This document shows, piece by piece, positions 4,109-52,695 of a DNA stretch of 64,000 nt. Below the pieces are notes generated by a model that was given only the letters and a program-made list of their open reading frames with translations, was not told the DNA's origin and made no database searches. Numbering within the stretch: the first letter of the stretch is position 1; each line of letters begins with the position of its first letter. The position numbers were made by a program, and so were the translations under genes. This stretch comes from Mobula birostris (lineage: Eukaryota), in the NCBI RefSeq assembly GCF_030028105.1, contig NC_092379.1, forward strand, positions 28,699,821 to 28,763,820. Reading direction: 5' to 3'.

Positions 4109-5172
4109 ACAATGGGGCGTTGGGAACGAACCCAAATGCAAGACACAGACACTGAATTACAAGGAGCAGGACTTGACTACAGTAGGGACATGACAGGATT
4201 CAGACCAGGAGCAGGGACAGGAGCTTAGAGTTGGGCTAGGGAAAGCGGGACCAGGATTGGTAACCATGGACTAGGAGATAAGGCTTGGGCTCCTGGCCCG
4301 AGACTGGACAAGGACACAGAAAGTGGGTGTAGCCTCTGGCTCGGGCCCCAGAACCAGGCAAGGACATGACATGGTTTCAGGACAGGACGTGGTTGGGGCC
4401 TACAGGCCTGAGCTTGGAGACAGCCTGGGGTGTTTGTTCTTGTGCTTGTTTTAAGGCTGCGCTCTTGGGTCTTGAGCTTGGCTTGAGGCTGGTGTCTTGG
4501 ATCTTGTACTTGGCTGCAGGCTGGGGTCTTGTGTCATGTGCTCGGCTTGGGATCCTCGATTCTTAGGTTCTTGGAGCTTGGCTTGGGATCCTCGAGGCTT
4601 GGGTTCTTGGAACTTGGCTTCGATCCTAAAGGATTAGGTTATTGGAGCTTGGCTTGGGATCCCCGAAGCTAGGTTTTTTGGAGCTTGGTTTGCGATCTTG
4701 GAAGCTCGTGTTCTTGGAGCTTGCCTGCGGGATCCTCGAGGCTTCGGTTCTTAGAGCTTGGCAGCTGGATCCTCGAGGCTTGGGTTCTTAGAGCTTGGCT
4801 TGGGATCCTCGAGGCTTGGGCTCCTGGAGCTTGGCTTGGGATCTTCGAGGCTTGGGTTCTTGGAGCTTGGGTTGGGATCATCGAGGCTTGGGTTCTTGGA
4901 GCTTGGCTTGGGATCCTCGAGGCTTGGGTTCTTGGAGCTTGGCTGCGGGATCTTCGAGGCTTGAGGGCTTCGAGCTTGGCTGCGGGATCATCGACGCTCG
5001 GGTTCTTGGAGCTTGGCTGCGGGATCGTCGAGTCTCGGGTTCTTGGAGCTTGGCTGCGGGATCTTCGAGGCTCGGGTTCTTGGGCCTTGCCTGCGGGATT
5101 CTCGAGGCTTGGGGTATTGGAGCTTGGCTGCGGGATCGTCGAGGCTCGGGTTCTTGGAGCTTGCCTGCGGTT
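4105..5172 (+). mobile_element. Truncated LTR of the same family as 46918-48212 (opposite orientation)
   Basis: Begins TGTCACAATGG..GAACG.ACCCAAATGCAAGACACAGACAC, homologous to the reverse complement of 48130-48212; the other end is lost. Confidence 0.75.
4540..5172 (+). repeat. 36-bp minisatellite (GAGCTTGGCTTGGGATCCTCGAGGCTTGGGTTCTTG), about 17 units
   Basis: Direct periodicity of 36; it explains the repetitive ORFs at 4685-5224, 4758-4964 and 4795-5184. Confidence 0.9.
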
Positions 5173-9115: not shown

Positions 9116-10506
9116 GATACGGAGTCGGCATTAACATCAACAATAGGATTTTATCAAATTCTGAACCAGGTGAAGGTAATTACGTCACGTCAGGAGCATC
9201 AGAGGCTCGGGGGAGACACGTGCCCTTCCTCTCGAACCGGATTGGTATATTCCCTATGATGTGCCTTCAACTCGACAGGCGTGTTGGTTCTCGGTCAGCT
9301 TCACTTAGGGCTTCATTTTACACCCTTACTTTACATATTGTAGTAGATGGCTGTTGTGTTTTCTTAATGGCAGATGTCGGAGTCCTGGGTGATCCAGAGT
9401 CTCCCAGGGAAATACATCTGCAAGGAATGCATCTGTCTGAAGCTCCTTGAAGACCATGGTAGGGATCTGGAGTGACCTTCGGCTTGTACGGCAGAGCTAG
9501 AAGGTAATCGATCGGAGTCATAGGGAAGTAGCCACCGCGAAGCTGCAGGAGGCAAGTGGCTATTGGACAATCAGGAGAAATGGAAATATGAAAGACAGTT
9601 AGTGCAGCGCACCCTTGTGGTCATTCCTGTCAATAGTAAGAATATTTTTCTACATACCGATGTGGGGGATGAACTCCCGGTGAATGCTAGGGAGACAGGG
9701 CTACTGCAACGCAGCATAGGCCCGTGCTGCAGATAGGAAAAAGGAAGAAGAAGTGAGCGGTAGCGAGAGGGGACTCAGCAATCGTGGGAACAGACAGGAG
9801 ATTCTGTGGACGCGAGCACAGCACCCTGATGGTATTCTGCCTCCGACATGTCAGTTTCGAATCTCACCAAAGACATTTTAGAGAGGTAGGATCAGCATTC
9901 AGATGTCAGGGCGCACATTGGCACCAATGACACACGAAGGAAGAGCAAATAGATGCTGAAAAATGTATTTGTAAAGCAAAAAAGAAGGCACTGGCAGATT
10001 TTGACGGGTACGAGGGATGTGCAGTTACTATTACAAGGCTCAAAGATCTGAACGAGCTAAGTCACCCGTACCAAATAAACTGCAATTTCAGGTTCTGAAA
10101 GAAGTAGTGTTAGAGATTATGATGATATTTTTAATGATCTTACAAAATTATTGTACTGTGTCATGGTGCCAGAGGAATGTAACATTGGAAACGTCACTCT
10201 ACTCTTTACGAAAAGCAGAAATTAAAGGCCTATTAGCCTGATCGCAGTGGTTGTGAATATGTTTGATTTAATTGTTAAGGATGAAGTTAGGGAGTATTTG
10301 GTGACACAGGACCAGATAGGAGAAAGTCAACATGGTTTCCTTCAGGAAAATATTACCTGACGATCATGTTGCGATTATATGAGGAGACTACATGTAGGTC
10401 AGATAAAGCGGGTGCAATGGATGTTGTCTGTGAGGTGTTACATCAGGCCTTTGGCAAGGTGGCAAATATGAGGATGCTTGACAAGTTAAGACCCTATAGT
10501 ACTACA

Positions 10507-10698
10507 GGGGTATATGGTGTGTCAGGAAGGGGTAGCACCTCTGGTGCGGGAACATGTCGCGCCCTTTTCAGGGCGATTAGTCCACCTTTGATCCCCACCT
10601 GGCACTCAGCTCTCACCTGTGGCTCCCCGTAGCTGTTTGCATGCGACAGCGGCCACACCCCGGGCAACGGCTTCGACAAGCCGGCTAAACCAGGTGAG
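10507..10698 (+). ncRNA. HDV-like self-cleaving ribozyme (candidate)
   Basis: P1 GGGGT(A)T 10507 / ACACCCC 10655-61; P2 CTCACCTG 10612-19 / CAGGTGAG 10691-98; P3 GGC 10621-23 / GCC 10652-54; L3 TCCCCGT; J1.1/4 GGGCAAC 10662-68; P4 GGCTT-CGAC-AAGCC; J4/2 GGCTAA with the C75 equivalent at 10685. Confidence 0.8.
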
Positions 10699-11070
10699 GG
10701 TAGCCGACGGGTCTCAAACCCTCGGTGAGATAGGGATTGTCTATCCCAGCATGTGAAGACAGACTCCGGCGGATTGAGCGGACGAGACCAATGGAAGGTC
10801 CAACGGTCAAGAAGGCGGTCTCTGCAAGCGTCGCGGAACGTGTAGAGCAGGACAACACACAGAAGATGTCCTGGTCATCCACTGCGCCTAGTCCCATCTC
10901 CAGCCGTCTAGACTCTGTCTTGCCACTGGACCGAGATGGGAATTGGGAACAGATAGTGAGGCTGTCGCTGCGGAACTCTCCCTCACTTAAATCCAAATCA
11001 CGCGCTAGTCTGGACACCATCATTATGGTGTCGAGGTCCTCATCGACGTCAACGATGGACGAACAACAAC
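10507..11070 (+). mobile_element. ~560-bp non-autonomous retroposon (RTE-like, short internally deleted type), (AAC)n tail, ~11-13-bp TSD
   Basis: TSD atagtactacagg 10496-10508 versus atggtactacagg 11071-11083; tail gaacaacaac; 3' hairpin GACACCAT-CATT-ATGGTGTC; second copy inverted at 52138-52695. The RTE assignment is inferred. Confidence 0.8.
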
Positions 11071-12463
11071 ATGGTACTACAGGAATGTTACTGGTATGGT
11101 TAGAGTAGTAGCTGTTTGGCAGGAGGTAACGAATAGCACTAAAATAATCACTCTCCGGTTGGCTGCCGGTGACAGGTGGTGCTCCGCAGTGGTCCCTGCT
11201 GGAAGCAATGTTTTTTTATGCTGTACATCAATGATTTAAATGATAGAATCCTTCCCTTTGTTGCCAGGTTTGCAGATGATGCGAAGACCGATGAAGGGTC
11301 AGGGTGCTTTGATAAAACAGGTAATCTGCAGAAAACCTGAGACAAATGACCAGAATGGGAAAGAGAGTGTAAATGAAATATCATCTTGGAAAATACATGG
11401 TCATGCACTTCGTTGGAAGAAATAATTGTGCAGACTATTTTCTGAACGTGGACAAAAGCCAAACCTATGATGTGCAAAGATGCAACGGGGCTTGGTAGTC
11501 CTTGTGCAGAACACCATTAAGGTTTTTTTTCGTGGAATTGGCGGAGAGGAAGACAAATACAATGTTAGACCTCATTTCAGGGGGTGGAGAATACAAGAGT
11601 AGGGATGTGTTGCTGACGCTTAAAGGCACTGGTGAGGCCCCACTTTGGGTATTGTGAACAGTTTTGGGCTCCTCATTGAAGAAAAAATCCGCTCGCATTG
11701 GGGAGAGTTCAGAGGAGGTTCACAAGGATGATTCCTGTAATTATTTACATACGAGAAAAGTTTGATATTTAGGAGTCTGTGCTCCCTGGAATTTAAAAGG
11801 ATGAGTGGGATCTCACTGAATCTTTTCGAATGTTGAAAGGCCTAGACAGAGTAGATGTGTAAAGGATGTTTCATGTGGTGAGGGAGTCTATGACAAGAAG
11901 GCTAAGCCTCAGGCGAGACGGGCGTGAATTCAATGCAGAGATGCGGAGAAACTCCATCAGCGCGAGTGTGGTGAATTTGTTGTATTTGTTAGCACGGGTA
12001 ACTGTAGAGGTAGGTCAGGTGCTTGGGAATACTTAAGGCAGAGCGTGATACGTTTTTGATTCGCCACGGTATCAAAGGGTCCAAAGGGAAGGCCGAGAGT
12101 GGGGCTGAGAAAGGGTCAATGATCAGCCATGATTTAATGGCGGAGCTGGTTCGATGGGTCAAATGCCCTAATTCTTTTGCTAAATTTTATGGTCTTACGG
12201 TTTTACCTTCTGTTTCAACATGGTCAAGTTTTAGCAGACTTTCAATTTTTCGCTCTCGACCTTCTTCGCGTGTCTCCTTCTTGCTGCATCCGCACCAGAA
12301 TATGTCTCGTTCCCTACCTTGTCTCCCTTAATCACTCTTATCACCTGTTTCCTCTCCTTTCTACCCATCCTCTGCACCCCGCACTTTCCGTTTCTCTTTT
12401 CTTTTGTCCTCCACTTTTCGTCTCTAACTTTCTCTCACTTACTTTCCCTTCCCCTTTCGCCCG

Positions 12464-12494: not shown

Positions 12495-13635
12495 AACTAT
12501 CTCCTCCTTCTTTTGCCATTTTGCACGGATTCCCTGTGGATGCTCCTAATTACAAACAATTATCCTCGGACAGGTATAATCCTCCTCGTACAAAACTGCT
12601 ACTAGGGGCTTTGGGTGTGTTGTAGCTCGTGTCCCCCTGCCCCTTCACCCTCTTGTAGCCTCTGAGCAGGGAGGTTGTGTTGTCTCAGGACGGACCGTTG
12701 TTCGATGTTGAGCAGAGTGTGGTGAGCCGCGGGCGCCCTCCGTTCCATGCGCCCATTGTACGCAGGATGTGTTCTGTCCAGATCGGCAATGGCACTGTAT
12801 TAGGTAGGGCTGATCATGCAAATATACATAACGGAACCCGGCACAAAGCAACTGGAGATATTTGAATCCAAGCAGCGGCCATTTCATGTCCAAACAACCT
12901 GAAATCTTCTCCGATGTAGTTTGCTATTGAGTTTCGCTGTCCTAATTAACCACGTGATTCTCGCAAATATTTGGATGCGCCACTTCGATTTTTCTGGCAA
13001 GACCGGCCCTCTAGCGACTGTTCACTGCATCACACCTCGCACACACACTACGTATTTTAAACATAAATTCACTTTGAACAATGACTATTTCTCACAGTAC
13101 GAGAATGGAACGGCCAAAATACGATTTACATTCTCTATCACGCTAAACATCCGGAGGATCTGTCGCATTATCTGAATCCTCAGGATAAATCAGAAATAGC
13201 TCCTGCAACATCCTTAATTTCAGCAGCATGTCACTTGCTGTTCTTTGTGAAACTGAAAACAACGAGTTTGTCCACACTCTGTTTTCCCTTAGTTACCCAC
13301 TGCCCTTTTTAAATATATCGCAGTTCCACTCCGTCCTTATTACTTCTCCATGCAGATGCTCGAACAATGTGGTCAAAGACGACGTAATACTACGTTGCCA
13401 AACGTGATGCCGTTGCAACAAAGAGGGTGGGTAAATGCACATTGCCGTATCCAGGAAATACATTACGAAGATCCAGTTTCGGTTTGCGTTGTACTCATGA
13501 ACTGTCGCCGCCTTGTGTTGGTGATTGCAGCGCTCTTACGTAGGGCAAGTGACCACGGCTGATTTCAGTGTGCGTTCTACCACTTTCCCGGCAAAAGTCG
13601 CCCTCGAGTGAGAGCTTTTTGCATTATACAGAACC

Positions 13636-14104
13636 AGTTTTTTCTCGGACCCGCCGCCTTCAGGCTACAGCGTGGTACTTAGTGAACGGAGATAGATGCC
13701 ACAGTCCGACACAAGTGCTTTTACGATATTCAACTGAGCCGTCTTGCTGCCTTTCTGCAATCTAGCGGTAAATGTCACTGGACAATCTTGTTGCCGCTCT
13801 ATTCTTCCTGTGTTATATACCTTCAGCAAATACGTTGGAGATCCTGCTCTACGTTGAATGTATCAAAAGATATATTCATCAGCGTCAGTGTAATTACAAT
13901 TCATTGTTATGGTCTGCCCTTCCTTAGCCGTTACGTCGGGAGGAACCTGCGTCACTGAATCTATCCCAGACGATCCTGCAAGAAAGGACCGAATACATTC
14001 ACATCGTTAGCTTCTATTGAACACCGGAACAATTCGCGAGCCACCTTAGCAGAGACTCCAGGCAGCAAAGCCAATGAAATCAGTAACGAACAGAGGGAAA
14101 TCAT
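13636..14104 (-). pseudogene. TCR V pseudogene, family A
   Basis: Exon 13975-13675 with Trp41>TGA and Cys104>Arg; leader donor deleted; RSS CACGCTG - 23 nt - GAAAAAACT at 13674-13636. Confidence 0.9.
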
Positions 14105-15241
14105 CGTGTATAAATTCTCTCTGAATCGAACGGCAGATTCCTTTCAGGACGTAATTATAACAGATTTTGTGGTGTGAGATTGTTTCAGCGGTACCCTTCA
14201 CATTGTGTAAGAGCCGGGGTGTTTCCCTGTTCAAAGGCTTCGCTGACAGAAAAAAAAAACGATAGTTTCTGATCACCAATCTGAAACGGGTATGTCAGTA
14301 TAAAAATAATGCTTAGTAGAGACTGTAACTTCGAAATAGCGACCGCTGTCTCCTCTCTCGTTTTTGAACGAGCCATATCAGTCTCTCATTTATTAGTGTG
14401 AGAGAGAGAGAATGCATATGAAACGATGAAATGTTGCAGTAAACAGCGAGCTTTTGTTGTACTGTAGACCAACCCCTCTCTGTGTATCTGGTTGCTTCCA
14501 TGGTGGTTGCTGGTGGAAGTGCTGAAGCTTTATGCTAGAATAAGTGAGAGAGATAGAAGTTGTTTATATTTAATGCTGCTTGGCGCAGATTATACAAGGG
14601 ATGTGGCAGGGGACGTTTAGGTTCCTATCTTTTTCTGATATTGATGCTCTCGGTTTCCGTTCTGTTTTTAGAACGTCTATGGAGACTATAAATACCAGGT
14701 TGTGTATTTTGTACCTTCACTGATTTTTAACGGAACCATTGAAACAAGCTGGGCGTTATTTTCGCTGTACCCTGAAACAACTGACAACAACAAATATATA
14801 ACAAAACATAAATCATTTTGATGTAACTGTGTGCGTCTACAAAGTGCAGGAATATATCAGGCTGTCCTTCATCAGTTCATATAACATGGGTTGAGCAGGA
14901 AAGTGGCGGTGGTGCTGGACTGCAGAGTGCCTGTCATGGCACCCTGGCGATATCTGGTCTCATGTCCCAGAGATTAGGTTCGATTCCGACTTTCAATGCT
15001 GTCAGCAGATAATTACGTGCTCAGTTTCCAGAATTCCCGAGTTGCTATGTTTTCTACTGCCCGAAAAAGACGCTCTGGGTAGCACGTGCTCGTAATCGGA
15101 GGATCAGTGAATGTACATGTTGAGAGGAATTTGCGAAATTGGACAGATAAATCAGTCGACAATAACACCATAAGATACAGGAACTGAATTAGGTCATTTG
15201 ACCTGTCGAGTCAGCTCAGCCATTTCAGATGAGAAGGTGTG

Positions 15242-15518
15242 GTAATGGAATTATTCGATACACTAAACATATAATTAAAATGAGATATTCAAAAAGTCGA
15301 AATATACCTTTGGAAACAGATGCTATCTGTTTGTGCTCCTTCGACAGTAACCGGACGTTTTCACTTTTTGTCCCTTCCATCGGTGGGAAAACAGAAAATT
15401 CTAAAAGCAAGTTCCCATGAAACAACAATCGACTATTCCCACTTGCAAGAGTATTGAACTGTAGGATGAAATTAAGTCTTAATCTTGGTATGACCTATCT
15501 CTGTATTTCCTGCCTGTG
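15242..15518 (-). pseudogene. Ancient V relic, family F (5 copies in window)
   Basis: Acceptor-like aaaaatgcag at ~15520. The LQFNTLASGNS..LF segment is a few substitutions and one indel from LQCNYSASGNSLFWY. Paralogs at 46.4 and 55.7 kb end in the family-A heptamer CACACTG. Confidence 0.45.
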
Positions 15519-16436
15519 CTGCATTTTTATACGTCTATCACAGTTTATTTTTGTATCCTTTTATTGTTTTACTTTGTACTGCCTCGATAAGCTGTATAGT
15601 GAATGCATCGGTATAAACAGAATCTATGCAATAGGCGACAATAATAAACAAATTCCGTTTTCAATTTAGATATGTAGCAAAATGCTACACGTGGTGATAA
15701 CATTGGATTCGTTAAATCCGATTGGGAAACCAGATTACTCAAGCAATCGCTCTGTTGTGATCCCATTCCCTCTCTCTTCCCTCTCTCTCTTTTATACTGA
15801 TAATGCCTTCAAAATATGAATCTCGGTAAAAACATATGTACTTAAATCATAAATTTAATTCAAACATTGAACCTTTTATTCACAGCTTCGGAATGCAATG
15901 GCCAATAATAGTATCTGAATTCTCCAACGCGCTAAGCGTCCGTAGGTTCTGCCGAATTATCTAAATACACAGTATGAATCATAAGTAGCTGCTGCAACAT
16001 CCTTAATTTCAGTAGCATGCCACTTGCAATTATTTGTCAATTCAAAAACGACCAATTTTCACACCCTCTGTTTTTCATCAGTCAGCCATTGTGCCATTTA
16101 AATATATCCCGGTTCCACTCCGTCCTCATTATTTCACACTGCAGATACTTGAACAAAGTGCCCAAAGACGATGTCAAACAAGGCTGTCAATCGTGATAAG
16201 CCGTCGCTGCAAAAGATGGTGGGTGATTGCACATTGCGGTATCCCAGAAAGTTATAAAGCTCAGTTTGTGTCCGCGTTGTAATCAGGAACTGCTCCTTTA
16301 GCTTCGGCGCCTTCTGCTGCTGAATGCAGGGCTCTTCAGTAGGGCACGTGACTATGACTGATTTCTGGGGGTGCCCTCTGCAGATTCCTCGGAAATAGGC
16401 GCCCTCCAGTGAGAGCTTTTTGCAATATACAGAACC

Positions 16437-16475
16437 AGTTTTTGCACGGACCCGCCGTCACCATATAACAGTGTG
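16437..16475 (-). promoter_or_regulatory. 23-RSS (CACACTG - 23 nt - GCAAAAACT)
   Basis: Heptamer 16475-16469, spacer 16468-16446 (23 nt), nonamer 16445-16437, directly abutting the V exon. Confidence 0.92.
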
Positions 16476-16907
16476 GTACTCATTGCACAGAGATACATGG
16501 CAGAGTCCGAGACAAGAGCTTCACGGATATTCAATTGAGACGTCTTGCTGCTTTTCTGTAAAGTAGCGGTATACCTCTCTGGACAATCAGAATGCCGCTG
16601 CATTTCTCCTGTGCTATATAGCTTCAGCAAATAATTTGGAGGTCCTCCAGTATGTTGAATGTACCAAAAGATATTTGGATTAGCGTCAGTGTAATTACAG
16701 TTCAGTGTTATGTTCTCTCCTTCCTTTGCCGTTAAGTCGAATGTATCCTGCGTCACTGAATCTTTCCCACTCGTTCCTGTAAGAAAGGACAGAATACATC
16801 AACAACGCTGGCTTGTATTGAATGCCGGACAAACTCGCTAGCCAGCTTCGCTGAGACTCACCAGGCAGCACAGCCAATACAATCAGCAATGAACAGAGAG
16901 AAATCAT
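16476..16907 (-). CDS. TRAV: Intact TCR alpha/delta V segment; leader 16907-16862, intron 16861-16777, V exon 16776-16476
   Basis: Leader MISLCSLLIVLAVLP-G, GTGAGT donor, 85-nt intron. Exon GTSGKDSVTQDTFDLTAKEGENITLNCNYTDANPNIFWYIQ...DSAMYLCAMST is open, with Cys23, Trp41 and Cys104, and is followed by a 23-RSS. Alpha versus delta cannot be separated from sequence alone. Confidence 0.93.
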
Positions 16908-16973
16908 GTTGTCTAATTTCTGGCTGAATCGAACGGCAGATTTCTTCCTGGGCGTTATTATCACAATAGATAT

Positions 16974-17125
16974 TGTGGTACGAGATAGTTTCAGCGATAC
17001 CTTTCAGATACTTTTCACCTTCTGTGAAACCTAAGGTGTTTCTTCTGGTTAAAAGATTGGCTGACAGGAACAACCGAGCCTTCCTGAGCACCAATCAGAA
17101 GCTTTTTTGTATCCATTCGTCATTC
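16974..17125 (-). promoter_or_regulatory. Putative V promoter module: RUNX site (TGTGGT 16974-79), inverted CCAAT pair (17056-60, 17091-95), CRE-like half site
   Basis: Same motifs at the same spacing upstream of the 43.9- and 51.0-kb genes; full TGACGTAA at 57434-41 and 63079-86. Confidence 0.55.
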
Positions 17126-17233: not shown

Positions 17234-17519
17234 CTTAATCACAACATATTCACTAACGTATCAATGTGTAATCAATGTGTAATCTAACATAATTAAGACT
17301 TTTCGTGAGTTCGCTTCTTCAAAATCAACAATATCCCACTGGAAGTAGTTGATTCCTTCATTGTATTTGTTTTGTTGGTTAATTATTTGAAGATATATCC
17401 TACAGTAGGCCTAAAGTCAATATGTTTCCATCTTCCAGCATTGAACTACTTATTCCAATGTCAGTAAGAGTTCATCTGGAAATTTCCTAATCTTTGTTTG
17501 CTGCTGGGGTGCCAATTTC

Positions 17520-18025
17520 TTCTTTACGCCAATAGACTCCTGACAGCACTTTCTGTGTAGCCATCATTTTCTTTCGTAAATTAAAATTCAAATCTGCCGC
17601 TTCCCTTGTAATGTCTTCCATTCGCCTCAAGATATCGTCCACTCGCATGAGCCATTTCCACCCTTAGATCAAAGTGCTAGTTGTCCACTTCATTATGCCC
17701 CTTATCATATCATACACGGCTATTAGTTTACCCCTTACCTTCCGTCGTTCCAACAAGAACGATCCTTGCTCCCAGAAACTGAAATGCCCCGTGGAATATA
17801 AATGCACTTGCGGATGCGTAACTGAGTTTCAACATTACTATTCGTTCTCCCTTAATCGTCGATGAAGTGCGATAAATCGTTCCCAGACGATTCTATAAAA
17901 GAGGGACAAAATGACTGAACACTCAATGCCTCCATTGTACATGGGAGACACCAGCTCACTATTTGTGCAACGGTACACCGGGCAGCAAAACCCATATTAT
18001 CAGTTAGGATCTAGAAGCACATAGA
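17520..18025 (-). pseudogene. Ancient V relic, family E
   Basis: Homologous to 33045-33549; ..KLSYASASAFIF.. and ..SGVYW..; acceptor tcttttatag at ~17893. Confidence 0.5.
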
Positions 18026-18136
18026 GTCTACTTTCAGACGAGATCTAAGCCAGATTACATTCAAGAAGCTAATTCCACAGACTGGCGAGAATTATGTCAG
18101 ATACGCTACACCCTTCACTTTGTGAGAAACCTCCCT

Positions 18137-19265
18137 TTTTGCAAGCAGGCGTTTAAGGAGACGACCCAAGTGCATGAAACAGACACCGAAGTATGAGGAA
18201 CTGGATTAAGATTATCAAGAATGCTAGGGAAGCAGGGATTGATCGGGGCAATCCAGGAAAGAGCAAAGCGTTAGCAGGAATAAGCGTACCTGGAAAAGGA
18301 CACAGGACCTGAATTAGACTAGGACTCAAGTCCTGGAATAGGACTTGGACTAGTAGCACGGGACCCGGACGTGGAAATTGGAACAAGGAGCCAGGAGTAG
18401 GAACTCTGAACTCCGGTACCAGAGTCTGGACAGGGACACGGAACCTGGGTCTTGACTCAGACCCGGAACCCGGGCCTGGTCTAGGACTCGGGACTAGGAA
18501 CTTGACTAGGAATCGGAAGGAGGACTTGGATCGGAAATAACAGTCGACAGGGACCTGGAACACGAGGCCTTGACTTGGACTGGACTGCAATACGAAGCCT
18601 TGATTGAACTGGTCTGTAACACGAAACACAGAGACGGGACTCCTCCTTGGATACAGGATATGGGCCGGGACTCCTCTCAGACACGGAATACAGAGCTAGG
18701 ACCCCTCCTTGAGTAAAAGACATAGGGCAGGGACTCCTCTTATACACAGAACACTGAAGACGAGGAGACAGATTTTGACTCAAGGTAGCGGCAGACAGCT
18801 AGACCTACCTAGCGAAGGCGAGGACACGAAAAAACAAGACCACACAACAATAGACTGTTCCTAATATTGACAAGACAAGGCTCCGGTCTCAATCCGGCGG
18901 GTTAACTTGACGTGCATTCTGACGAAGTCACAGACGAGGTTTGCAGACGACTTCGGAGACGAGGTGATTGACGAAGGTTGCTGTCAACGTTTCAGGGCAG
19001 GTTTTACACTAGGTTACAGACGAGTTTACAGAGGAGGTACAGACGAGGTACAGACAACGTGACTCAAGGGGTTCTGAAGGGAACTGTGCAGACGCTATTA
19101 CTGGACCCCTGAGCTTTTTTTTTTTATGTTGCCAGCCCGAGACGAGACTCAGGTGCCTCAGTTAAGGTCCCCGACGGAGCAAGGGCAAAACGAAGTAACT
19201 GGAATACTAAATCCACGGGCCGGACCGTGAAGCGGAATGCGCACTTCACCGACTGGACCGTGACA
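18137..19265. mobile_element. Solo LTR of the minisatellite-bearing family
   Basis: Begins ..gacccaagtgcatgaaacagacac (homologous to 2028-2050) and ends ..ggaccgtgaca; absent from paralogous sites near 33660 and 52770. Confidence 0.7.
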
Positions 19266-31470: not shown

Positions 31471-31974
31471 CGTGGGGCTACATGCTGAACATTTTCACCT
31501 CGTCCCACTTCCATATGAGGTTACCACCTGGCTTAGAATATCACTATTCAGTTTGCACCTCAGAACAAATATAAAGTAACGTGCCTAATTGACCACCGGC
31601 CAGTGACTCTGAATCTCTGAATCCATCATCATTACGTGATAATGGCACAGATTAACTCCAGCTATCCAGCCAAACTCGACCCACTGCTGTTCACTACTGT
31701 GAAAGCTCTACTTTCTAGTCTTACATGCATCTACAGGTGTGCTTTTATGTAACCCACATTCGCTAGACAGCTGTTATCGACTGCGCTATGTAATATCCCA
31801 GTTTGGGTGCGTGTTGTAATCAGGAACAGTTCCTTTAGCTGCGGCGCCCTGTGCTGCTGATTGCAGCGATCTTAAGTAAGGCAGGAAACCATGGCTGATT
31901 TCCGGGTGCGCCCCTCCCACTTTCTGGGCAAAAAGACGTCCTCCGCCCAGAGCATTTTGCATTATTCAGGACCA

Positions 31975-32447
31975 GTTTTTTGACCGGACTTGCCATCTGC
32001 ATTCAACTTTATGACACTCATTGCACAAAGATACATACAGGAGTCCGAAACATGAACTTAAACGATCTGCAATTGAGCTGTCTTGCTGCCTTCCTGCAGA
32101 CTAGTATTAAATCTCTCTGGGCAATGTGGACGCCGCTCCATTCTTCCTGTGCTACATACCGTCAGCAAATAAATTGGAGGTTTTCCACAATGCTCAATCC
32201 ACAAAAACATATCTGCATCATCGTTGGTATAATTACAGTTCAGTGATATGGTCTGTCCTTTTTCAGCCGTTACGTCGGGAGGATCCTGTGTCACTAAGTC
32301 ATTGAACTACTCGTTCCTGCAATAAAGGGCAGAATACATCAACATCGCTGTCTTGTATTGAACGCTGAGGAAATTCGCTGGCCACCTTCGCAGAGACTCA
32401 CGAGGCAGCACAGGCAATTCAAACGCTAATGAACAGAGGGACATCAT
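31975..32447 (-). pseudogene. TCR V pseudogene, family A
   Basis: Leader 32447-32402; 2-nt frameshift near the exon start; TAA in FR3; heptamer CATAAAG. Confidence 0.9.
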
Positions 32448-33044
32448 GTTGTCTAATCTCTTGCTGGATCGACCAGTAGACTCTTTCTAGGCCGTAAATA
32501 TCACTTAGCAGTTACTGTTGTGTGGGATCGTTGAAACGGTACCGTTTACTATGTGTAACACCGGGGACGTTTCCCTGGTTAAAGAATTCGCTAACACTAA
32601 GAACCGAGCCTTTCTGAGCGCCAGTCAGAATCCGTTTTGTTTTATTCGTCATTCAGGGTTTTTCTCCGCTCAGTCAAGGTCCCGCGTCCACTCCCCGCCC
32701 TATCCCGTCTCTCTGTTTCTCTTTCTCTCTGTCTCACGCCCTCTCTCTCTAAGTGTGCCCAACTGCCTCTGTCCCCTGTTCTCTGCATAATCACAGCATA
32801 TTCACAAAATTATCGATGTGTAATCCAAATCAAATATGAAGTTCACGTGGTCACTTCGTCGTCTTCGTCAATGTTATGCTAGAAGTATTTATTTATTCAT
32901 TTGTTTATTTAGTTAGTTATTTGAAGATATATCCCATAATTGTCCCTTAGATCAACATTTATTTGTCTTTCGTCAATATTCAATGTCAACAAGTGTTAAT
33001 CTGGTTGTTCCCTAATCTTTGTTTGCTGTTAGGGAACTAATCTC

Positions 33045-43200: not shown

Positions 43201-43443
43201 TGATATTCCGTTTCAGCAAAAGATGGTGGGTGATTGTACATTCCGGTATCCCAGAAAGTTATAAAGCTCAGTTTGTGTCCGCTTTGTAATCAGAAACTGC
43301 ACCTTCAGCTTCGGCGTCTTCTGCTGCTGAATGCAGCGCTCTTAATTAGGGCACGTGACTGTGACTGATTTCTGGGTGCGCCCTCTGCAGATTCCTCGGA
43401 AAAAGGCGCCCTCCACTGAGACCTTTTTGCAATATACAGAATC

Positions 43444-43482
43444 AGTTTTTGCACGGACCCGCCGTCCCCGTATAACAGTGTG
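43444..43482 (-). promoter_or_regulatory. 23-RSS (CACACTG - 23 nt - GCAAAAACT)
   Basis: Heptamer 43482-43476, spacer 43475-43453, nonamer 43452-43444. Confidence 0.92.
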
Positions 43483-43905
43483 GTACCCATTGCACAGAGA
43501 TACATGGCAGAGTCCGACACAAGAGCTTCACGGATATTGAATTGAGACGTCTTGCTGCCTTTCTCTAAAGTAGCGGTAATCCTCTCTGAATACCGCTGCG
43601 TTTCTCCTGTGCTATATAACTTCAGCAAATAATTTGGAGGTCCTCCACTATGTTGAGTGTACCAAAAGATATCCGCATTACCATACGTGTAACTACAGTT
43701 CAGTTTTATGCTCTGTCCTTCCTCAGTCGTTATATCGGGAGGATCCTGCGTAACTGAATATTGCCCACTCGTTCCTGCAAGAAAGGACAAAATACATCAA
43801 CAACGTTGGCTTGTATTGAACGCCGGACAATCTCGCTAGCCAGCTTCGCTGAGACTCACCAGGCAGCACAGCCAATACAATAAGCAATAGACAGAGGGAA
43901 ATCAT
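43483..43905 (-). CDS. TRAV: Intact TCR alpha/delta V segment; leader 43905-43860, V exon 43774-43483
   Basis: Leader MISLCLLLIVLAVLP-G, 85-nt intron. Exon GTSGQYSVTQDPP...LNCSYTYGNADIFWYTQ...DSAMYLCAMGT is open. Close paralog of the 16.5-kb gene with a 9-nt in-frame deletion. Confidence 0.93.
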
Positions 43906-44149
43906 GGTGTCTAATTTCTGGCTGAATCGAACGGCAGATTCCTTCCAGGGCGTTAAATTCACAACAGTTATTGTGGTAGTAGATTGCTTCAGCGATACCT
44001 TTCACCTTGTGTAAAACCGGAGGTGTTTCTCTGGTTAAAAGATTGGCTGACAGAAAGAAACGAGCCTTCCTCAGCACCAATCAGAAGCTGTTTTGTATCC
44101 ATTCGACATTCAACCTGTTTCTCAGCTCTTACAATGTCCGGTGTTCATC

Positions 44150-44200
<51 letters not shown>

Positions 44201-45078
44201 CCTCCGTCTCTCCCTCTCTCTCTATTTCTCTCTCACACGCGCGCGCTCGCCCCCGCTCTCCCTAGTCATTTTCCCTGCTGCCACATTTTTCCTCGCCTCC
44301 TGTCCTTTTGCTCTGTTTCTTTTTTCTCTTTCCGTTACTGTTTAATCTCCCTCTCTTTGTCTCGATCCATCACTTTTGCCACCGCATTTCTTCGTCATCC
44401 TCCTATTCGACTCCTTCCGTTTTTCTCCCTCACTGACTCTTTCAAGTGGATGTGAAGGTATTTATTTTATCATTCCTTTGTACTACCTCGATAAGCTGTT
44501 CAAAGATTTGATTTCTTAAATCCCAGTCAATGCAATCATCCGACAGGAATAAACAAACATATCCAGCAAAATGCCCCACGTGGTGATAACATCAGATCCG
44601 TTCAATCTGTTTGGGAAACCAGATTATACAAGCTATCACTCTGTTGTGCTCCCACTCCCTCTCTCCCTCTCTCGCTCTCTTTTCTACTGAAAAAGGCTTC
44701 ATAATATGTTTATGGGTGGTGTGCAGTCAAGTATATGTACTTTAATAATAAAGTTACTTTGAATATTGAACCTCTTTCGCTATCACGCGAAACATTGGCA
44801 GGTTCTGTCGCATTATGTAAAAACTCAGTATAAATCAAGGTAGCTCTTGCAGCATCCTTAATATCGGTAGCATGTCACTTGCAGATCTTTGTCAATCCGA
44901 AGACCACCATTTTTCCCAACTGTGCTTTCTGTTCATCAGCAATTGTCCTATTTAAATATATCCTACTTCCAATCCATTCTCATTATTTCTCAGTCCATGG
45001 CTAATTTCTAGGTGCGCCCCTTCCAGATTCCCGGAAAAGACCCCCTCCAGTGAGAGTTTTTTTGCATTATATAGAACC

Positions 45079-45362
45079 ATTTTATATAGATAAAAATATA
45101 TGCCAGTATTCGACACAAGAGCTTCAAGAAAATGTAATTAGGCCGTCTAGATGTCCTTCTGCAACTAGCGGTAAATCTCACTGGGCAATCTAGATGTCGC
45201 TGCCTTATTGCTATGCCCTATAACTGCAGCGAATAATTTGGAGATTCTCCACAATGTTGAACGTACGAAAAGATAGTTGCATCAGCTGAAATGTAATTAC
45301 GTTCGCAGAGACTCAGCAGGCAGCACAGCCAATCCAATCCGTAACGAACAGAGGGAAAGCAT
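45079..45362 (-). pseudogene. TCR V pseudogene: RSS deleted, intron and FR1 deleted
   Basis: Leader ATG at 45362; atgtaattac joined to gttcgcagagactc at ~45300; no heptamer. Confidence 0.85.
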
Positions 45363-45668
45363 GCTGTCTATTTTCTGACTGGATCCAACGGCAGATTTCT
45401 TCCAGGACGTAATTAGCACTCAACAGATATTGTGGTATGAGGTCGTTTCACTGATAGCTTCCATCTTGTGTAAGAGCAGGGACGTTTCCCTGCTTTTTGG
45501 ATTCGCTGACACAAAGAACCGAAATCTTTCTGAGCAACAATCAGACTCTGCTTCATTTCTATTCGTCTTTCTACTTGTTTCTCCGTTCTTTGAAAATCGC
45601 ACGAGAACCGCTCACTCTCTCCCTCCCCCTTTCCCTCTTTCTCTCTCTCCCTCTATTTCTTTCTCTCT

Positions 45669-46917: not shown

Positions 46918-48212
46918 TCTCATGGTCTGGTCCGTGAATTTCGCATTCCGGTTCACGGTCCGGTCCGTGGACTCAGGACTCCGGGTCTTCCAGCTGTCCC
47001 TCGTTTGGTTGAGTTTTCATAGGCACCTGATTTCCATATTTGGGCTTGAAATATAAGTATCCCTGGGGTTGAGTGTGGGCTGCTGGTTTGTCTTGTGAGA
47101 CGACTTGGAGCAACCTGCTGATGGAAAGCTAGAGAAACCATTTGAGATCTCGAGGCCTGGTTGTAGGACCACCGCTTCATGGAGCCTTGTTGCCACTCGT
47201 TGGAGTAGTTGTTTGCAGTACGGATTCGGCTGTTTCCCGGTCCAGCTGAGTCGCCGTCACACTCCGAGCTCGGTAGGGATCCGGCTGTTTCTGTAGCCGG
47301 CGGTGGTTTCTGGGTGTAACTGCGAATCCCAGCAACCCCGAAGCAGAGATGGGACTGTCTGTCTTTCTTTATTGTTTCTCTCTTCTTGTGTTCGCCTCCG
47401 TGGGATAAGTCAGGCTGTTCTGCCGTTGCCCTGCGGAGGGTCATGTCTTGTCTTGTCCTCGCCTCCGTGGGGTAAGTCAGGCCGTTTGGCCATTGCCCTG
47501 CGGGGGCACATGTCTGGCCTTCGCCTCTGTTGGGTAAGTCCAGTCGTTCTGTCGTTACCCGACAGATGTGCCTGTCCCACCTTGGTGAGGAGAGGTTGTG
47601 TCCCGGCTTGTCTAAGTATAAGTCCAGGCTCAATATCTGGGTACTGTCCTGCATCATGTTGCTGTCGTGTTAACAATGAGTCCCGGCTTTCCGAAGGACA
47701 AGTTCCGGCTCTATATTGTTGTTCAGTTCCCACTCGGTCTCTCAGCTCCAGCCTCCGAGTTATATGCCTCCGCATTTCAATACGAAGATCCCGCAGCCAA
47801 GCTCCTAGAACCCAAGCGTCGACGATCCCAAGCCAAGCTCCAAGAATCCAAGCCTTGAGGATCCCAAGCCAAGCAAGAATACAAGCCTCGAAGATCCCGC
47901 AGCCATGCCCCAAGAACCCAAGCATGGATGATCCCGCAGTCAAGCTCCAAGAAGACAAGCCTGAAGACCCCAGCGTCAAGCCTCAAGACCAAGACCCCAG
48001 TCTCAAGCCTCACGACCCAAGACCCCAGCCTGCAGCCGAGCTCACGACCCAAGAGCCCAGCCTCAAACCTCAAGACCAAAGACCCCAGCCTGTCTCCAAG
48101 CTCAGGCCTCTAGACCCCAGCCACGTCTTGTCCTGAAGCCATGTCATGTCCTTGCCTGGTTCTGTGTTTGTGTCTAGCATTTCGGTCCGTTCCCAACGCC
48201 TCCATTGTGACA
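46918..48212. mobile_element. Solo LTR (T[C]TCATGG...GTGACA), 5-bp TSD TATAC, internal 36-bp repeats
   Basis: TATAC at 46913-17 and 48213-17; empty site cagattatacaag in several paralogs; TATA-like gaaatataag at ~47050. Confidence 0.88.
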
Positions 48213-49939: not shown

Positions 49940-50532
49940 GAATAGGAGGAGGGGCATTAAAAGAAGTTAGGGAAATCAATCTTCATGCCATCATGTTGGA
50001 CGTTACCCAGACGGAATATCAGGCTTTCTTCCTCCAACCTGAGTGTGGCTTCATCTCAGCAGTGCAGGAGGCCATGGGTTGCCATATCGGAGTGGGAATG
50101 GGACGTGGAATTAAAATGTATGGCCACTGGAAGATCCTGCTTCCTCTGGAGGGCATCCTGTGTTTTCCTTTGGTCAGCAATTAATCATCACAAATATATC
50201 CTGGTTCCACTCCGTCCTTATTATATTTCCTTGCAAACAAACGAATAAAGTGGTCAAAGACAATCTCAGTCAAGGCTGTTTATTGTTATATGCCCTTACA
50301 GCAAAAGAAGATGGGAGAATGCACATTGATTTATTCAGGAAATGAGTGGCAAACTTCTAGTTTGGTTGCACCTTGTAATCAGAAACTGTTCCTTTAGCTT
50401 CCGCGATTTCTGCTGCTGCTCACAGCGCTCTTAAGCAGGGCACGTGACCATGGATGATTTCTGGGTGAACCCCTTCATGAGTCGCCGCGAAAAGGCGCCC
50501 TCCTGTGAGATTGTTCTGCATAATACGGCACT

Positions 50533-50571
50533 AGTTTTTGTCCGGACCTGCTGTCTCCATACAACAGTGTG
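50533..50571 (-). promoter_or_regulatory. 23-RSS (CACACTG - 23 nt - ACAAAAACT)
   Basis: Heptamer 50571-50565, spacer 50564-50542, nonamer 50541-50533. Confidence 0.93.
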
Positions 50572-51003: not shown

Positions 51004-51249
51004 GGTGTCTAATTTCTGTTAGAATCGGACAGCAGGTTCTTTCCAGGACGTGATTATCACTCAATAGATATTGTGGTGTGAGGTCTTTTCAGCGATAACT
51101 TTTACTTTCTGTATGAGCGGGGGCGTTTTCTTCGTTAAAGGATTGGCTGACACAATGAACCGCGACTTTCTGAGCACCAATCAGAATCTGCTTTCTTTCC
51201 ATGCACGTCATTCTGCCTCTTTCTCCGCTCTTTCAATGTCGCGCATTCT

Positions 51250-52137: not shown

Positions 52138-52695
52138 AGTTATAGAGTTGTTCGTCCATCGTTGACGTCGATGAGGACCTCGACACCATTATGATGGTGT
52201 CGAGACTAGCGCATGATTTGGATTTAACTGAGGGAGAGTTGCGCAGCGTCAGCCTCACTCTCTCTTCCGAATTCCCATCTGGATCCAGTGGGAAGACAGA
52301 GTCTAGACGGCTGGAGATGGGACTAGGCGCAGTGGATGACCAGGACGTCTTCTGTGTCTTGTCCTGCTCTACACGTTCCACGACGCTTGCAGAGACCACC
52401 TTCGTGACCGTTGGACCTTCCATAGGTCTCGTCCGCTCAATCCGCCGGAGTCTGTCTTCACATGCTGGGATAGACAACTCCCTATCTCACCGAGGGCTTG
52501 AGACCCGTCGGCTACCCTCACATGGTTTAGCCGGCTTGTCGAAGCCGTTGCCCGGGGTGTGGCCGCTGTCGCATGCAAACAGCTACGGGGAGCCACAGGT
52601 GAGAGCTGAGTGCCAGGTGGACTAACCGCCCTGAAAAGGATGCGACATGTTCCACCACCAGAGGTGCTACCCCTCCCTGACACCCCATGCACCCC
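52138..52695 (-). mobile_element. Second copy of the ~560-bp ribozyme-headed retroposon
   Basis: Reverse-complement homolog of 10507-11070; possible TSD AAGCCAGATA at 52127-36 and 52703-12; empty site in the paralog near 33575. Confidence 0.8.
52517..52695 (-). ncRNA. HDV-like ribozyme (candidate), copy 2
   Basis: 72-nt core identical to copy 1; 5' end GGGGTGC, with a second perfect GGGGTGT at 52686-80; P2 3' strand carries one mismatch (CATGTGAG); C75 equivalent at 52530. Confidence 0.75.

What the first reader, a model, noticed from the sequence alone, without database searches (positions are those of the whole stretch)
10507..10698. HDV-like self-cleaving ribozyme forming the 5' end of a short non-autonomous retroposon
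Seen: every element of the nested double pseudoknot is present in the right order. P1 GGGGTRY pairs with ACACCCC; a long J1/2 carries its own hairpins (GCACC-TCT-GGTGC, CGCCCT-TTTC-AGGGCG); P2 is CTCACCTG/CAGGTGAG; P3 is GGC/GCC; L3 is TCCCCGT; GGGCAAC follows P1; P4 is GGCTT-CGAC-AAGCC; J4/2 is GGCTAA. Established: GGGCAAC and GGCUAA match the genomic and antigenomic HDV ribozyme junctions, and HDV-like ribozymes define the 5' ends of R2- and RTE-type retroelements. Inference: G1 coincides with the TSD-defined element boundary, so self-cleavage would generate the 5' end of a ~560-nt mobile RNA with an (AAC)n tail, i.e. a ribozyme-headed SINE-like family. Whether this family is already catalogued cannot be checked here.
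Basis: partly seen in the sequence, partly recalled or inferred. Interest (0 to 1): 0.82.

Follow-up and report, generated by a model that had tools for sequence, protein, structure and literature searches.

The report
Ribozyme-headed deletion copy of RTE LINE
A 564-base jumping-gene copy in a ray genome starts exactly at a fold that has nearly all the parts of the hepatitis-delta-type self-cutting RNA, an arrangement already known from other jumping genes; here it carries an unusual extra hairpin in its catalytic loop, and cutting has not been tested.

Summary
The observation mostly holds. Window 10507-10698 can be drawn as an HDV-like nested double pseudoknot with P1, a structured J1/2, P2, P3, P1.1, P4 and a GGCUAA J4/2 carrying the candidate catalytic C10685. 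It begins at the first base of a TSD-flanked 564-nt retroposon ending in (AAC)3.

Corrections:
- L3 is 28 nt, not 7. A 19-nt hairpin plus one G sits between the L3 core and the 3' strand of P3.
- G1 pairs with C, not U.
- This copy has one A·C mismatch in P1.
- No Rfam HDV-family model matches, even at E≤10.

New evidence:
- The family has thousands of contigs in at least three related organisms.
- A full-length ~4.1-kb LINE (endonuclease + RT, hits named "craniofacial development protein 2-like", an RTE-type label) in another assembly has the same ribozyme directly after its TSD and the same GACGAACAACAAC 3' end.
- The 564-nt element is therefore an internal-deletion derivative of that LINE, not a SINE.
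- Compensatory changes occur in P2, P4 and the J1/2 closing helix. The candidate catalytic C and the GG of P1.1 are kept in every subfamily.

Cleavage is untested. First-stage notes on other windows of this genome appear to describe further copies. Verdict: very probably a genuine HDV-like ribozyme, a variant of a known kind.

The parts
10496..10508 (+). left target-site duplication ATAGTACTACAGG; its last two G overlap the element's first two G
   Evidence: GTACTACAGG is exact on both sides, 13 nt with one mismatch
10507..10513 (+). P1 5' strand GGGGTAT; proposed cleavage is 5' of G10507
   Evidence: family consensus GGGGTGT
10515..10608 (+). structured J1/2 domain (P1.2-like) closed by UGG.GUGUCAGG / CCUGGCACUCA, with two inner hairpins
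   Evidence: MFE folds; the closing helix changes compensatorily in subfamily B (GUGUCCA/UGGACAC) and becomes a perfect 10 bp in L012
10612..10619 (+). P2 5' strand CTCACCTG
   Evidence: U10618-A10692 becomes A-U in L012; C10617-G10693 becomes A-U as inferred from proteins P0134/P0135
10621..10623 (+). P3 5' strand GGC
   Evidence: invariant in non-decayed copies
10624..10631 (+). L3 core TCCCCGTA; C10625 and C10626 pair with G10663 and G10662 (P1.1); T10624 and G10629 match HDV U20 and G25
   Evidence: a TCCAAGT subfamily makes up 15-25% of depth and keeps U, CC and G
10632..10651 (+). extra hairpin GCUGUU-UGCAUGC-GACAGC plus G, inserted between the L3 core and the P3 3' strand
   Evidence: present in copy 2, L001, L002, L010 and L012; changes keep pairing (93% of cells paired)
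10652..10654 (+). P3 3' strand GCC
10655..10661 (+). P1 3' strand ACACCCC
10662..10668 (+). GG of P1.1 plus J1.1/4 (GGGCAAC)
   Evidence: GG is kept in subfamilies B (GGUACAC) and L010 (GGAAAAC)
10669..10682 (+). P4 hairpin GGCTT-CGAC-AAGCC
   Evidence: closing pair is G-C here and in L012, C-G in subfamily B, U-A in L010
10683..10690 (+). J4/2 GGCTAAAC with candidate catalytic C10685
   Evidence: C is kept as GGCAAA in L012 and GGCCAA in L010
10691..10701 (+). P2 3' strand CAGGTGAG (+GGT extension)
10702..11012 (+). body: 5' UTR and first ~90 codons of the parent LINE ORF (ATG at 10791), collinear with L012 10076-10587
11013..11061 (+). two 3' hairpins (GACACCAT-CATT-ATGGTGTC; GUCC..AUCG/CGAUGGAC) from the LINE 3' end
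11062..11070 (+). (AAC)3 tail
11071..11083 (+). right target-site duplication ATGGTACTACAGG
52147..52695 (-). second copy of the element (92% identical). Its core 52501-52604 is identical to copy 1 except G to T in the P2 3' strand. It has a 13-nt deletion in J1/2.

Best explanation
Window 10507-11070 is one old copy of a very abundant non-autonomous retroposon of rays. The family arose by internal deletion of a ~4.1-kb RTE-type LINE and keeps the LINE's first ~510 nt and last ~30-50 nt.

The first ~190 nt encode an HDV-like self-cleaving ribozyme. Proposed mechanism:
- The element has no promoter-type head, so it is transcribed as part of longer host or neighbouring transcripts (inferred).
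- The ribozyme folds into the double pseudoknot and C10685 acts as general acid with Mg2+ (inferred by homology of motifs).
- The RNA cuts itself 5' of G10507, removing upstream sequence and defining the 5' end of the transposition template (inferred).
- The LINE reverse transcriptase then recognises the 3' hairpins and (AAC)n tail and copies the RNA into a new site by target-primed reverse transcription, producing the TSD (the TSD is shown; the mechanism is inferred from established LINE biology).

The structured J1/2 domain and the 8-11-bp P2 probably 'pinch' P1 and P2 together, as shown for the RTE ribozyme drz-Agam-2-1.

This particular copy is probably a decaying relic. It has one P1 mismatch and 14 differences from the family majority.
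For: 1. All core elements are present in the right order and register. The strict descriptor is unique in the window and gives 0/32 shuffles.
2. The fold begins at the element's first base in copy 1, in copy 2 and in L003. It also does so, unambiguously, in the full-length LINE of L012: TSD ACTGAAGATC, then GGGTGT.
3. Family depth rises about 30-fold in the 10503-13 bin over the flank, and a further ~20-fold by 10514-24; thousands of contigs were laid in three organisms.
4. Compensatory changes: P2 U-A to A-U in L012; P2 C-G to A-U inferred from P0134/P0135; P4 closing pair G-C / C-G / U-A; J1/2 closing helix.
5. On 8 sequences, 85% of cells are paired against 32-47% when partners are slid. 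The covariation score was reached by 1/500 shuffles and extra pair types by 0/500.
6. The candidate catalytic C, the GG of P1.1, and the UCC..G of L3 are kept across subfamilies, while J1/2, J1.1/4, the P4 loop and the nucleotide after the C vary.
7. Precedent:
   - HDV-like ribozymes cleave at the first nucleotide of P1 and process RTE, R2 and L1Tc elements (PMC4908430, PMC6765202).
   - Their non-autonomous derivatives NARTc and the R2 SIDEs keep the ribozyme (PMC3185411, PMC3414825).
   - Structured J1/2 plus a long P2 activates drz-Agam-2-1 (PMC4908430).
   - The variable 5' junction of copy 2 fits cleavage at the element end (PMC3774820).
8. The parent LINE has EN + RT ORFs, and its EN hits carry RTE-type names.
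Against: - No Rfam HDV, CPEB3 or drz model matches the window copy or the L012 copy, even at E≤10.
- L3 is 28 nt with an internal hairpin, against 7-8 nt in characterised ribozymes (10.1101/2022.09.22.508989). I found no described example of this.
- G1 pairs with C, whereas HDV needs a G·U wobble (PMC1874588). L1TcRz does lack it, since its +1 is C (PMC3185411).
- J4/2 is 8 nt, and one U separates P2 from P3.
- The nested MFE is no better than shuffles (z -0.84).
- P1 and P3 never covary, so they are uninformative. Most copies are dead and CpG-decayed, so much of the variation is noise.
- One 'covarying' P1.1 cell is in a decayed copy.
- There is no RNA 5'-end data. The RNA-like runs are contigs only.
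Confidence: 0.72

Rival explanations
1. The 5' ~190 nt is a conserved structured RNA of the LINE, for example an RT-binding site, IRES-like element or stabilising 5' structure. It descends from or resembles an HDV-like ribozyme but no longer cleaves. The defined 5' end would then come from transcription initiation or processing by host enzymes.
For: - The L3 insertion, the G-C at the cleavage site and the long J4/2 depart from active-site rules (PMC1874588).
- Rfam is negative.
- HDV-like ribozymes of R2 also serve as protein-binding and IRES-like elements (PMC6765202), so structure could be conserved for those roles.
- Conservation between the two window copies continues past the ribozyme to about 10833.
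Against: - The residues kept invariant are exactly the catalytic ones (the C in CNAA, GG/CC of P1.1, U..G of L3), while flanking junction bases vary.
- The structure starts at nucleotide 1 in independent insertions, including the full-length LINE.
- No promoter-type head was found.
Confidence: 0.17
2. The element is a conventional SINE or other Pol III-transcribed retroposon. Its 5' end is a transcription start, and the HDV-like drawing is a coincidence of a GC-rich sequence.
For: - A loose HDV-like descriptor hits about 0.16 times per shuffled 64-kb window.
- The nested MFE is not exceptional.
- The element is short and highly repeated, like a SINE.
Against: - No tRNA, 7SL or 5S similarity.
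- The whole element is collinear with the two ends of a 4.1-kb EN+RT LINE.
- The strict descriptor gives 0/32 shuffles.
- Compensatory changes occur in P2 and P4.
- Motifs are identical to the HDV junctions.
Confidence: 0.04
3. The region is a fossil of an endogenised deltavirus-like or circular ribozyme-bearing RNA (retrozyme-like) rather than a LINE component.
For: - GGGCAAC and GGCUAA are identical to the HDV genomic and antigenomic junctions.
- Long ORFs are open on both strands of the body in both copies.
Against: - There is only one ribozyme per unit and no tandem or terminal repeats.
- The sense ORF is the N-terminus of a LINE ORF.
- The ORFs have no Pfam match.
- The element has a TSD and microsatellite tail typical of TPRT.
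Confidence: 0.02

Closest known systems
drz-Agam-2 family: HDV-like ribozymes at the 5' end of Anopheles RTE retrotransposons (Ruminski et al. 2011, cited in PMC6765202; kinetics in PMC4908430)
   Same: - Double-pseudoknot ribozyme heading an RTE-type LINE.
- Large base-paired J1/2 (P1.2) domain with short linkers.
- Extended P2 (8-11 bp here, 12 bp in Agam-2).
- Cleavage site at the first nucleotide of P1, which is the element's 5' end.
   Different: - No detectable sequence or CM similarity (Rfam negative).
- 20-nt hairpin insertion in L3.
- G-C instead of a wobble at the cleavage site.
- Vertebrate (ray) host.
- Activity not measured.
R2 SIDEs (short internally deleted elements of R2) in Drosophila, PMC3414825
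   Same: Non-autonomous retroposons made by internal deletion of the parent LINE. They keep the 5' HDV-like ribozyme and the 3' RT-recognition end.
   Different: - R2 and its SIDEs insert site-specifically in 28S rDNA and are Pol I co-transcripts.
- This family is dispersed with ordinary TSDs (one copy sits inside another LINE).
- It derives from an RTE-type element and is present in thousands of copies.
L1Tc / NARTc of Trypanosoma cruzi (L1TcRz), PMC3185411
   Same: An autonomous LINE and its non-autonomous partner share a 5' HDV-like ribozyme that cleaves at +1. There is no G·U wobble at +1.
   Different: - L1TcRz is a minimal 77-nt ribozyme that doubles as an internal promoter.
- It belongs to a different LINE clade and a protist host.
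HDV genomic and antigenomic ribozymes and the CPEB3 ribozyme
   Same: - GGGCAAC after P1 (genomic HDV) and GGCUAA J4/2 (antigenomic HDV).
- UCCNNG L3 core, 3-bp P3, 2-bp P1.1, 7-bp P1.
   Different: - L3 is 7-8 nt in those ribozymes (10.1101/2022.09.22.508989) and 28 nt here.
- J1/2 is a few nt there and 98 nt here.
- The G1·U37 wobble is required in HDV (PMC1874588) but is G-C here.

Membership tests
HDV-like self-cleaving ribozyme | Nested double pseudoknot in the order P1-J1/2-P2-P3-L3-P3'-P1'-P1.1-P4-J4/2-P2' | tested here: met
   all strands are in order. 85% of cells are paired over 8 sequences, against 32-47% for slid controls.
HDV-like self-cleaving ribozyme | P1 of 6-7 bp whose first nucleotide is the cleavage site and the 5' end of the product | tested here: met
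   7 bp in the consensus and 6/7 in each window copy. It starts at the TSD-defined 5' end here and in L012. Cleavage itself was not tested.
HDV-like self-cleaving ribozyme | 3-bp P3 closed by an L3 of 7-8 nt | tested here: not met
   P3 is present, but L3 is 28 nt: an 8-nt canonical-looking core plus a 19-nt hairpin plus G. Known L3 is 7-8 nt (10.1101/2022.09.22.508989).
HDV-like self-cleaving ribozyme | P1.1: two C of L3 pair with two G directly after P1 | tested here: met
   C10625/C10626 pair with G10663/G10662. GG and CC are kept in subfamilies A, B, L010 and L012.
HDV-like self-cleaving ribozyme | Catalytic cytosine in J4/2 (C75 equivalent, CNRA context) | tested here: met
   C10685 sits in GGCUAA. 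It is kept as GGCAAA (L012) and GGCCAA (L010), and lost only in the heavily decayed copy L011.
HDV-like self-cleaving ribozyme | G·U (or A·C) wobble closing P1 at the cleavage site | tested here: not met
   G10507-C10661 is Watson-Crick. T at 10661 occurs in only 2-8% of family depth, as CpG decay. The wobble is required in HDV (PMC1874588) but absent in the active L1TcRz (PMC3185411).
HDV-like self-cleaving ribozyme | Match to a curated covariance model (Rfam HDV, CPEB3, drz-Agam and others) | tested here: not met
   No match at gathering score or at E≤10, in the window or in L012. These models cannot encode the pseudoknots and they penalise the long insertions.
HDV-like self-cleaving ribozyme | Compensatory covariation supporting the helices | tested here: inconclusive
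   Seen in P2 (1 pair by DNA, 1 by protein inference), the P4 closing pair (3 Watson-Crick types) and the J1/2 stem. P1 and P3 are invariant. The sample is small and partly decayed.
HDV-like self-cleaving ribozyme | Mg2+-dependent self-scission giving 5'-OH and 2',3'-cyclic phosphate | not testable with these tools
   Only contigs of RNA-like runs were available, and they cannot show RNA ends.
Ribozyme-terminated non-LTR retrotransposon and its internal-deletion derivative (RTE; R2/SIDE; L1Tc/NARTc type) | The non-autonomous element shares both termini with an autonomous LINE encoding EN and RT | tested here: met
   Element nt 2-513 match L012 10076-10587 (76.6%) and nt 534-564 match L012 14130-14160 (90%). 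Exo_endo_phos and RVT_1 ORFs lie between them. The LINE comes from another assembly, not from this genome.
Ribozyme-terminated non-LTR retrotransposon and its internal-deletion derivative (RTE; R2/SIDE; L1Tc/NARTc type) | Target-site duplication and a simple-repeat 3' tail (TPRT hallmarks) | tested here: met
   TSD of 10-13 nt and (AAC)3 in copy 1. TSD ACTGAAGATC and (AAC)n in L012. Copy 2 has a 10-nt repeat with filler at both junctions.
RTE clade of LINEs | Phylogenetic placement of the RT/EN within RTE | tested here: inconclusive
   No tree was built. EN homologues at 55-65% identity are named 'craniofacial development protein 2(-like)', a label that to my knowledge is given to RTE/BovB-derived ORFs. 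The ~4.1-kb length and EN+RT-only layout fit RTE.
SINE (Pol III-derived short retroposon) | tRNA-, 7SL- or 5S-derived head with an internal Pol III promoter | tested here: not met
   No Rfam family and no tRNA in 10400-11150. The head is the LINE's own 5' end.

The most novel reading that the evidence does not exclude
The ribozyme is active, and the HDV-like catalytic core tolerates a whole helix inserted between the L3 core and the 3' strand of P3, where HDV has one or two spacer nucleotides. It also works with a Watson-Crick G-C at the cleavage site. That would define a structural subclass that current covariance models and descriptors miss. This subclass would drive one of the most abundant repeat families of ray genomes. 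It would head an RTE-type LINE whose 5' coding region is ~70-74% identical at the DNA level in molluscs, hinting at horizontal spread among marine animals.
Probability: 0.5. Interest if true: 0.6.

Novelty: new variant of a known kind. Interest (0 to 1): 0.5.

Why it matters
HDV-like ribozymes at LINE 5' ends are established, so the biology here is expected rather than surprising. Three points still matter.

1. This would be a very high-copy vertebrate example, with thousands of contigs per genome. It includes a parent LINE and a deletion derivative that can be compared directly.
2. The 20-nt helix in L3 and the missing G·U wobble lie in the catalytic core. If the RNA cleaves, the family consensus used for searches (Rfam models, RNABOB-type descriptors with 7-8-nt L3) is too narrow, and similar ribozymes are being missed elsewhere.
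3. It gives annotators a mechanistic reason for the sharply defined 5' end of this repeat family in ray genomes.

Tried and rejected
- Rfam at gathering score and at E≤10, on the window copy and on the L012 LINE copy: nothing from the HDV clan. The only hit was a chance mir-3099 match at E 5.5.
- Exact-pattern scans of metagenome and viral contig collections for the core: nothing.
- Nested MFE stability: not better than shuffles, z -0.84. It cannot model pseudoknots, so it is uninformative.
- Loose descriptor: too permissive, 0.16 hits per shuffled window. It was replaced by a strict one.
- Read laying on RNA-like runs to see a 5' end at G1: the runs are contigs only, so no RNA ends, strand or proof of expression could be obtained.
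- Per-position variation among thousands of copies: dominated by CpG decay everywhere. Conservation of the core is therefore not distinguishable from the body this way. Only subfamily differences were informative.
- The body ORFs as genes: no Pfam match. Differences between the two copies are mostly non-synonymous by eye. The sense ORF proved to be the N-terminal stub of the LINE ORF. The antisense ORF is unexplained and probably chance.
- Search for the ribozyme upstream of the homologous ORF in mollusc loci L006-L009: absent. Homology starts only at the position matching window ~10749-10767, and upstream is unrelated AT-rich DNA. No cross-phylum covariation could be obtained.
- Alternative registers that would avoid the L3 insertion (P3 = GCT/AGC with a 21-nt linker before P1'; P1 = TGTGGCT/GGCCACA): these lose the canonical P1.1, J4/2 or P2 arrangement and were rejected by inspection.
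- SINE head: none found.
- RT-fragment homologue names were uninformative for clade.
- Ruminski 2011 and Webb 2009 could not be read because they are not held.
- Dfam and Repbase could not be checked.

Full report
**What is in the sequence**

Window 10507-11070 (+) is a discrete 564-nt insertion. It is flanked by GTACTACAGG on both sides (10499-10508 and 11074-11083). That repeat extends to 13 nt with one mismatch, and the insertion ends in (AAC)3. It splits an older LINE reverse-transcriptase reading frame, which I recognised by eye only (YINDL...FADD).

A second copy lies at 52147-52695 on the minus strand and is 92% identical. No other similarity exists in the window.

**The fold**

- P1: 10507-13 with 10655-61.
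- P2: 10612-19 with 10691-98, extendable by U·G, C-G and G·U to 10701.
- P3: 10621-23 with 10652-54.
- P1.1: C10625/C10626 with G10663/G10662.
- GGGCAAC directly after P1.
- P4: 10669-82.
- GGCUAA, with C10685 in the position of HDV C75/C76.

Three corrections are needed.
1. L3 is not TCCCCGT alone. After TCCCCGTA there is a 19-nt hairpin (10632-50) and a G before the 3' strand of P3, so the P3 strands are 28 nt apart.
2. G1 pairs with C10661 rather than with a U.
3. This copy has an A·C mismatch at P1 position 6. Copy 2 has a C·A mismatch at position 7. Four of six related copies read GT there, so the ancestral P1 is GGGGTGT, a perfect 7 bp.

The 98-nt J1/2 folds as its own domain. It is closed by UGG.GUGUCAGG / CCUGGCACUCA and leaves only 1 and 3 nt as linkers to P1 and P2.

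**More than chance?**

- A loose topology-only descriptor is not convincing by itself. It gives 0.16 hits per dinucleotide-shuffled window, and 6 of 63 shuffles had a hit.
- A descriptor at the quality of the real site finds only 10507 in the window and nothing in 32 shuffles. That descriptor requires an 8-bp P2, UCC..G in L3, GG, CNRA and P1 ≥6/7.
- The nested minimum-free-energy fold is unremarkable (z -0.84).
- Rfam finds no HDV-clan match at gathering score or at E≤10, for the window copy or for the parent LINE.

Sequence statistics alone therefore leave the question open. The case rests on context and comparison.

**The family**

Contigs of public runs from at least three related organisms hold thousands of pieces of this element: 6908, 5557 and 4188 contigs were laid. 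An earlier follow-up note calls this genome a manta ray.

Summed depth rises about 30-fold in the 10503-13 bin over the flank and a further ~20-fold by 10514-24. It falls again at about 11065-70, which confirms the boundaries.

Most within-family variation is CpG decay and carries no information. The informative differences are those between subfamilies:
- An L3 variant TCCAAGT makes up 15-25% of depth. It keeps U, CC and G.
- A subfamily 'B' reads ...CACACCCC GGUACAC CGCUU CGAC AGGCG GGCUAAACC, compared with GGGCAAC GGCUU CGAC AAGCC GGCUAA here. It keeps the GG of P1.1 and the C of J4/2, and it flips the closing pair of P4 from G-C to C-G.
- Subfamily B also has a different J1/2, whose closing helix is GUGUCCA/UGGACAC instead of GUGUCAGG/CCUGGCAC. 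That is again compensatory.

**Origin of the element**

The sense ORF of the body (ATG at 10791) has no Pfam domain. It does hit a handful of short predicted proteins. Among them are Dreissena polymorpha hypotheticals and an Elysia marginata 'endonuclease/exonuclease/phosphatase domain-containing protein' that lies next to an RVT_1 gene.

A protein search with the reading frame that happens to span the ribozyme found ten more predicted proteins. Fetching the contig that encodes one of them (L012) gave the key result.

L012 holds a full-length ~4.1-kb LINE:
- It is flanked by the TSD ACTGAAGATC.
- Its first 512 nt are collinear with element nt 2-513 (76.6% identity).
- Its last 31 nt match element nt 534-564 (90% identity, ...GACGAACAACAAC).
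- Exo_endo_phos and RVT_1 ORFs lie in between.

The 564-nt element is therefore an internal-deletion derivative of this LINE. It is analogous to the R2 SIDEs (PMC3414825) and to NARTc (PMC3185411), and it is not a SINE. No tRNA, 7SL or 5S head is present.

The LINE's endonuclease has many 55-65%-identical relatives named 'craniofacial development protein 2-like', including one in the stingray Hypanus sabinus. To my knowledge this label is typical of RTE/BovB-derived ORFs. Clade membership is likely but was not tested by phylogeny.

**Comparative support for the ribozyme**

In L012 the ribozyme starts directly after the TSD (...GAAGATC|GGGTGTCAGG). This is an unambiguous 5' boundary, one G shorter than in the ray copies.

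Relative to the ray copies:
- P2 has U10618-A10692 replaced by A-U.
- The J1/2 closing helix becomes a perfect 10 bp, through U·G to U-A and G·U to G-C.
- The L3 hairpin keeps pairing, through U·G to U-A.
- J4/2 is GGCAAA, with the C kept.

Two predicted proteins, P0134 and P0135, show SPV changed to SHV and NQV changed to NHV in the frame across the ribozyme. That corresponds to C10617 to A and G10693 to T (or C). It is a second compensatory P2 pair if the base is T, and this rests on inference from protein. Copy 2 of the window carries only the G to T half.

A metagenome scaffold copy (L010) has a U-A closing pair in P4, GGAAAAC after P1, and GGCCAA in J4/2.

Pair counts on eight sequences:
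- 85% of cells form standard pairs, against 32-47% when 3' partners are slid.
- 4 pairs show changes on both sides.
- The number of extra pair types was reached by 0/500 shuffles.
- The covariation score was reached by 1/500 shuffles.

Caveats apply. The structure was derived from one of the sequences, several rows are decayed dead copies, P1 and P3 are invariant, and one 'compensated' P1.1 cell is probably CpG noise.

**Fit to known biology**

- In HDV-like ribozymes the cleavage site is the first nucleotide of P1. L3 and J4/2 form the core.
- Natural large members carry structured J1/2 domains. Together with short linkers and a long P2, these accelerate the RTE ribozyme drz-Agam-2-1 almost 1000-fold (PMC4908430). 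The layout here is the same.
- RTE and Baggins elements lack promoters and rely on read-through transcription plus ribozyme processing (PMC6765202).
- R2 elements whose ribozyme cuts at the element's end have variable 5' junctions with extra nucleotides (PMC3774820). Copy 2 shows a 7-nt filler that repeats target sequence at its 5' junction.

Against membership:
- HDV needs a G1·U37 wobble (PMC1874588). The active L1TcRz, however, starts with C (PMC3185411).
- L3 is 7-8 nt in HDV and CPEB3 (10.1101/2022.09.22.508989).
- I found no report of a helix inserted in L3. The insertion sits where HDV has its last one or two non-conserved L3 nucleotides, so it may project away from the core. That is my inference and is untested.

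**Verdict**

The most likely reading (about 0.7) is a genuine HDV-like self-cleaving ribozyme. It would define the 5' end of an RTE-type LINE and of its abundant deletion derivative in rays. The copy at 10507-10698 would be a slightly damaged relic.

The main rival (about 0.17) is a conserved but non-catalytic 5' structure.

The arrangement is a known kind. The L3 helix and the G-C cleavage-site pair make it a variant that current models miss. Other first-stage notes on this genome describe what appear to be further copies, including one noting the L3 hairpin. These are leads, not independent evidence.

Noticed in passing
window 10200-10506 and 11084-11400 (+): Copy 1 is inserted, in sense, into an older LINE reverse-transcriptase frame (…LYINDLND…FADDAKT… downstream of the insertion). 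This was recognised by eye only. The short ORF fragments gave no Pfam hit.
   Followed up: partly
L006:1563-1738, L008/L009:5974-6206 (Dreissena polymorpha); L007:5923-6160 (Elysia marginata); L005 (TARA ocean scaffold): The 5' coding stub of the ray element (window ~10749-11000) is 70-79% identical at the DNA level to LINE fragments in molluscs and in a marine metagenome scaffold. EN homologues at ~60% identity span cestodes, corals, shrimps, urchins, reptiles and a stingray. The pattern suggests horizontal spread of this RTE-type LINE. The mollusc copies lack the ribozyme region.
   Followed up: partly
window 52696-52712 and 52127-52146 (- strand copy): Copy 2 has untidy junctions. The 10-nt direct repeat TATCTGGCTT is separated from the element by a 7-nt filler (GTTATCT, a repeat of target sequence) at the 5' side and by 10 nt (TCTATAACTC) after the (AAC)2 tail.
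   Followed up: partly
window 10589-10601 vs copy 2: Copy 2 lacks 13 nt of J1/2, lying between two CCACCT repeats. The 91 nt from 10602 to 10692 are identical in the two copies, although they differ by ~8% overall.
   Followed up: partly
window 10685-11023 (-) and 52191-52625 (+): A long ORF (112 and 144 aa) is open on the antisense strand of the element body in both copies. It has no Pfam match and is probably chance in GC-rich sequence.
   Followed up: partly
window 4349-5166 and 47783-48164: A tandem array with a 37-nt spacing pattern (D13), with inverted partner arms ~43 kb away (I3-I8). Unrelated to the finding.
   Followed up: no
window 13000-17000, 31800-32650, 43270-45560, 50190-51200, 56450-57350, 59090-63080: Many direct-repeat families (D1-D12) recur at 2.6-7 kb spacing, suggesting a tandemly duplicated multi-kb unit across much of the window.
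   Followed up: no
L012:7430-8110 (+) and 17265-18281 (-): Further RVT_1 gene fragments flank the full-length LINE in the 20-kb locus, so this is a repeat-rich region.
   Followed up: no
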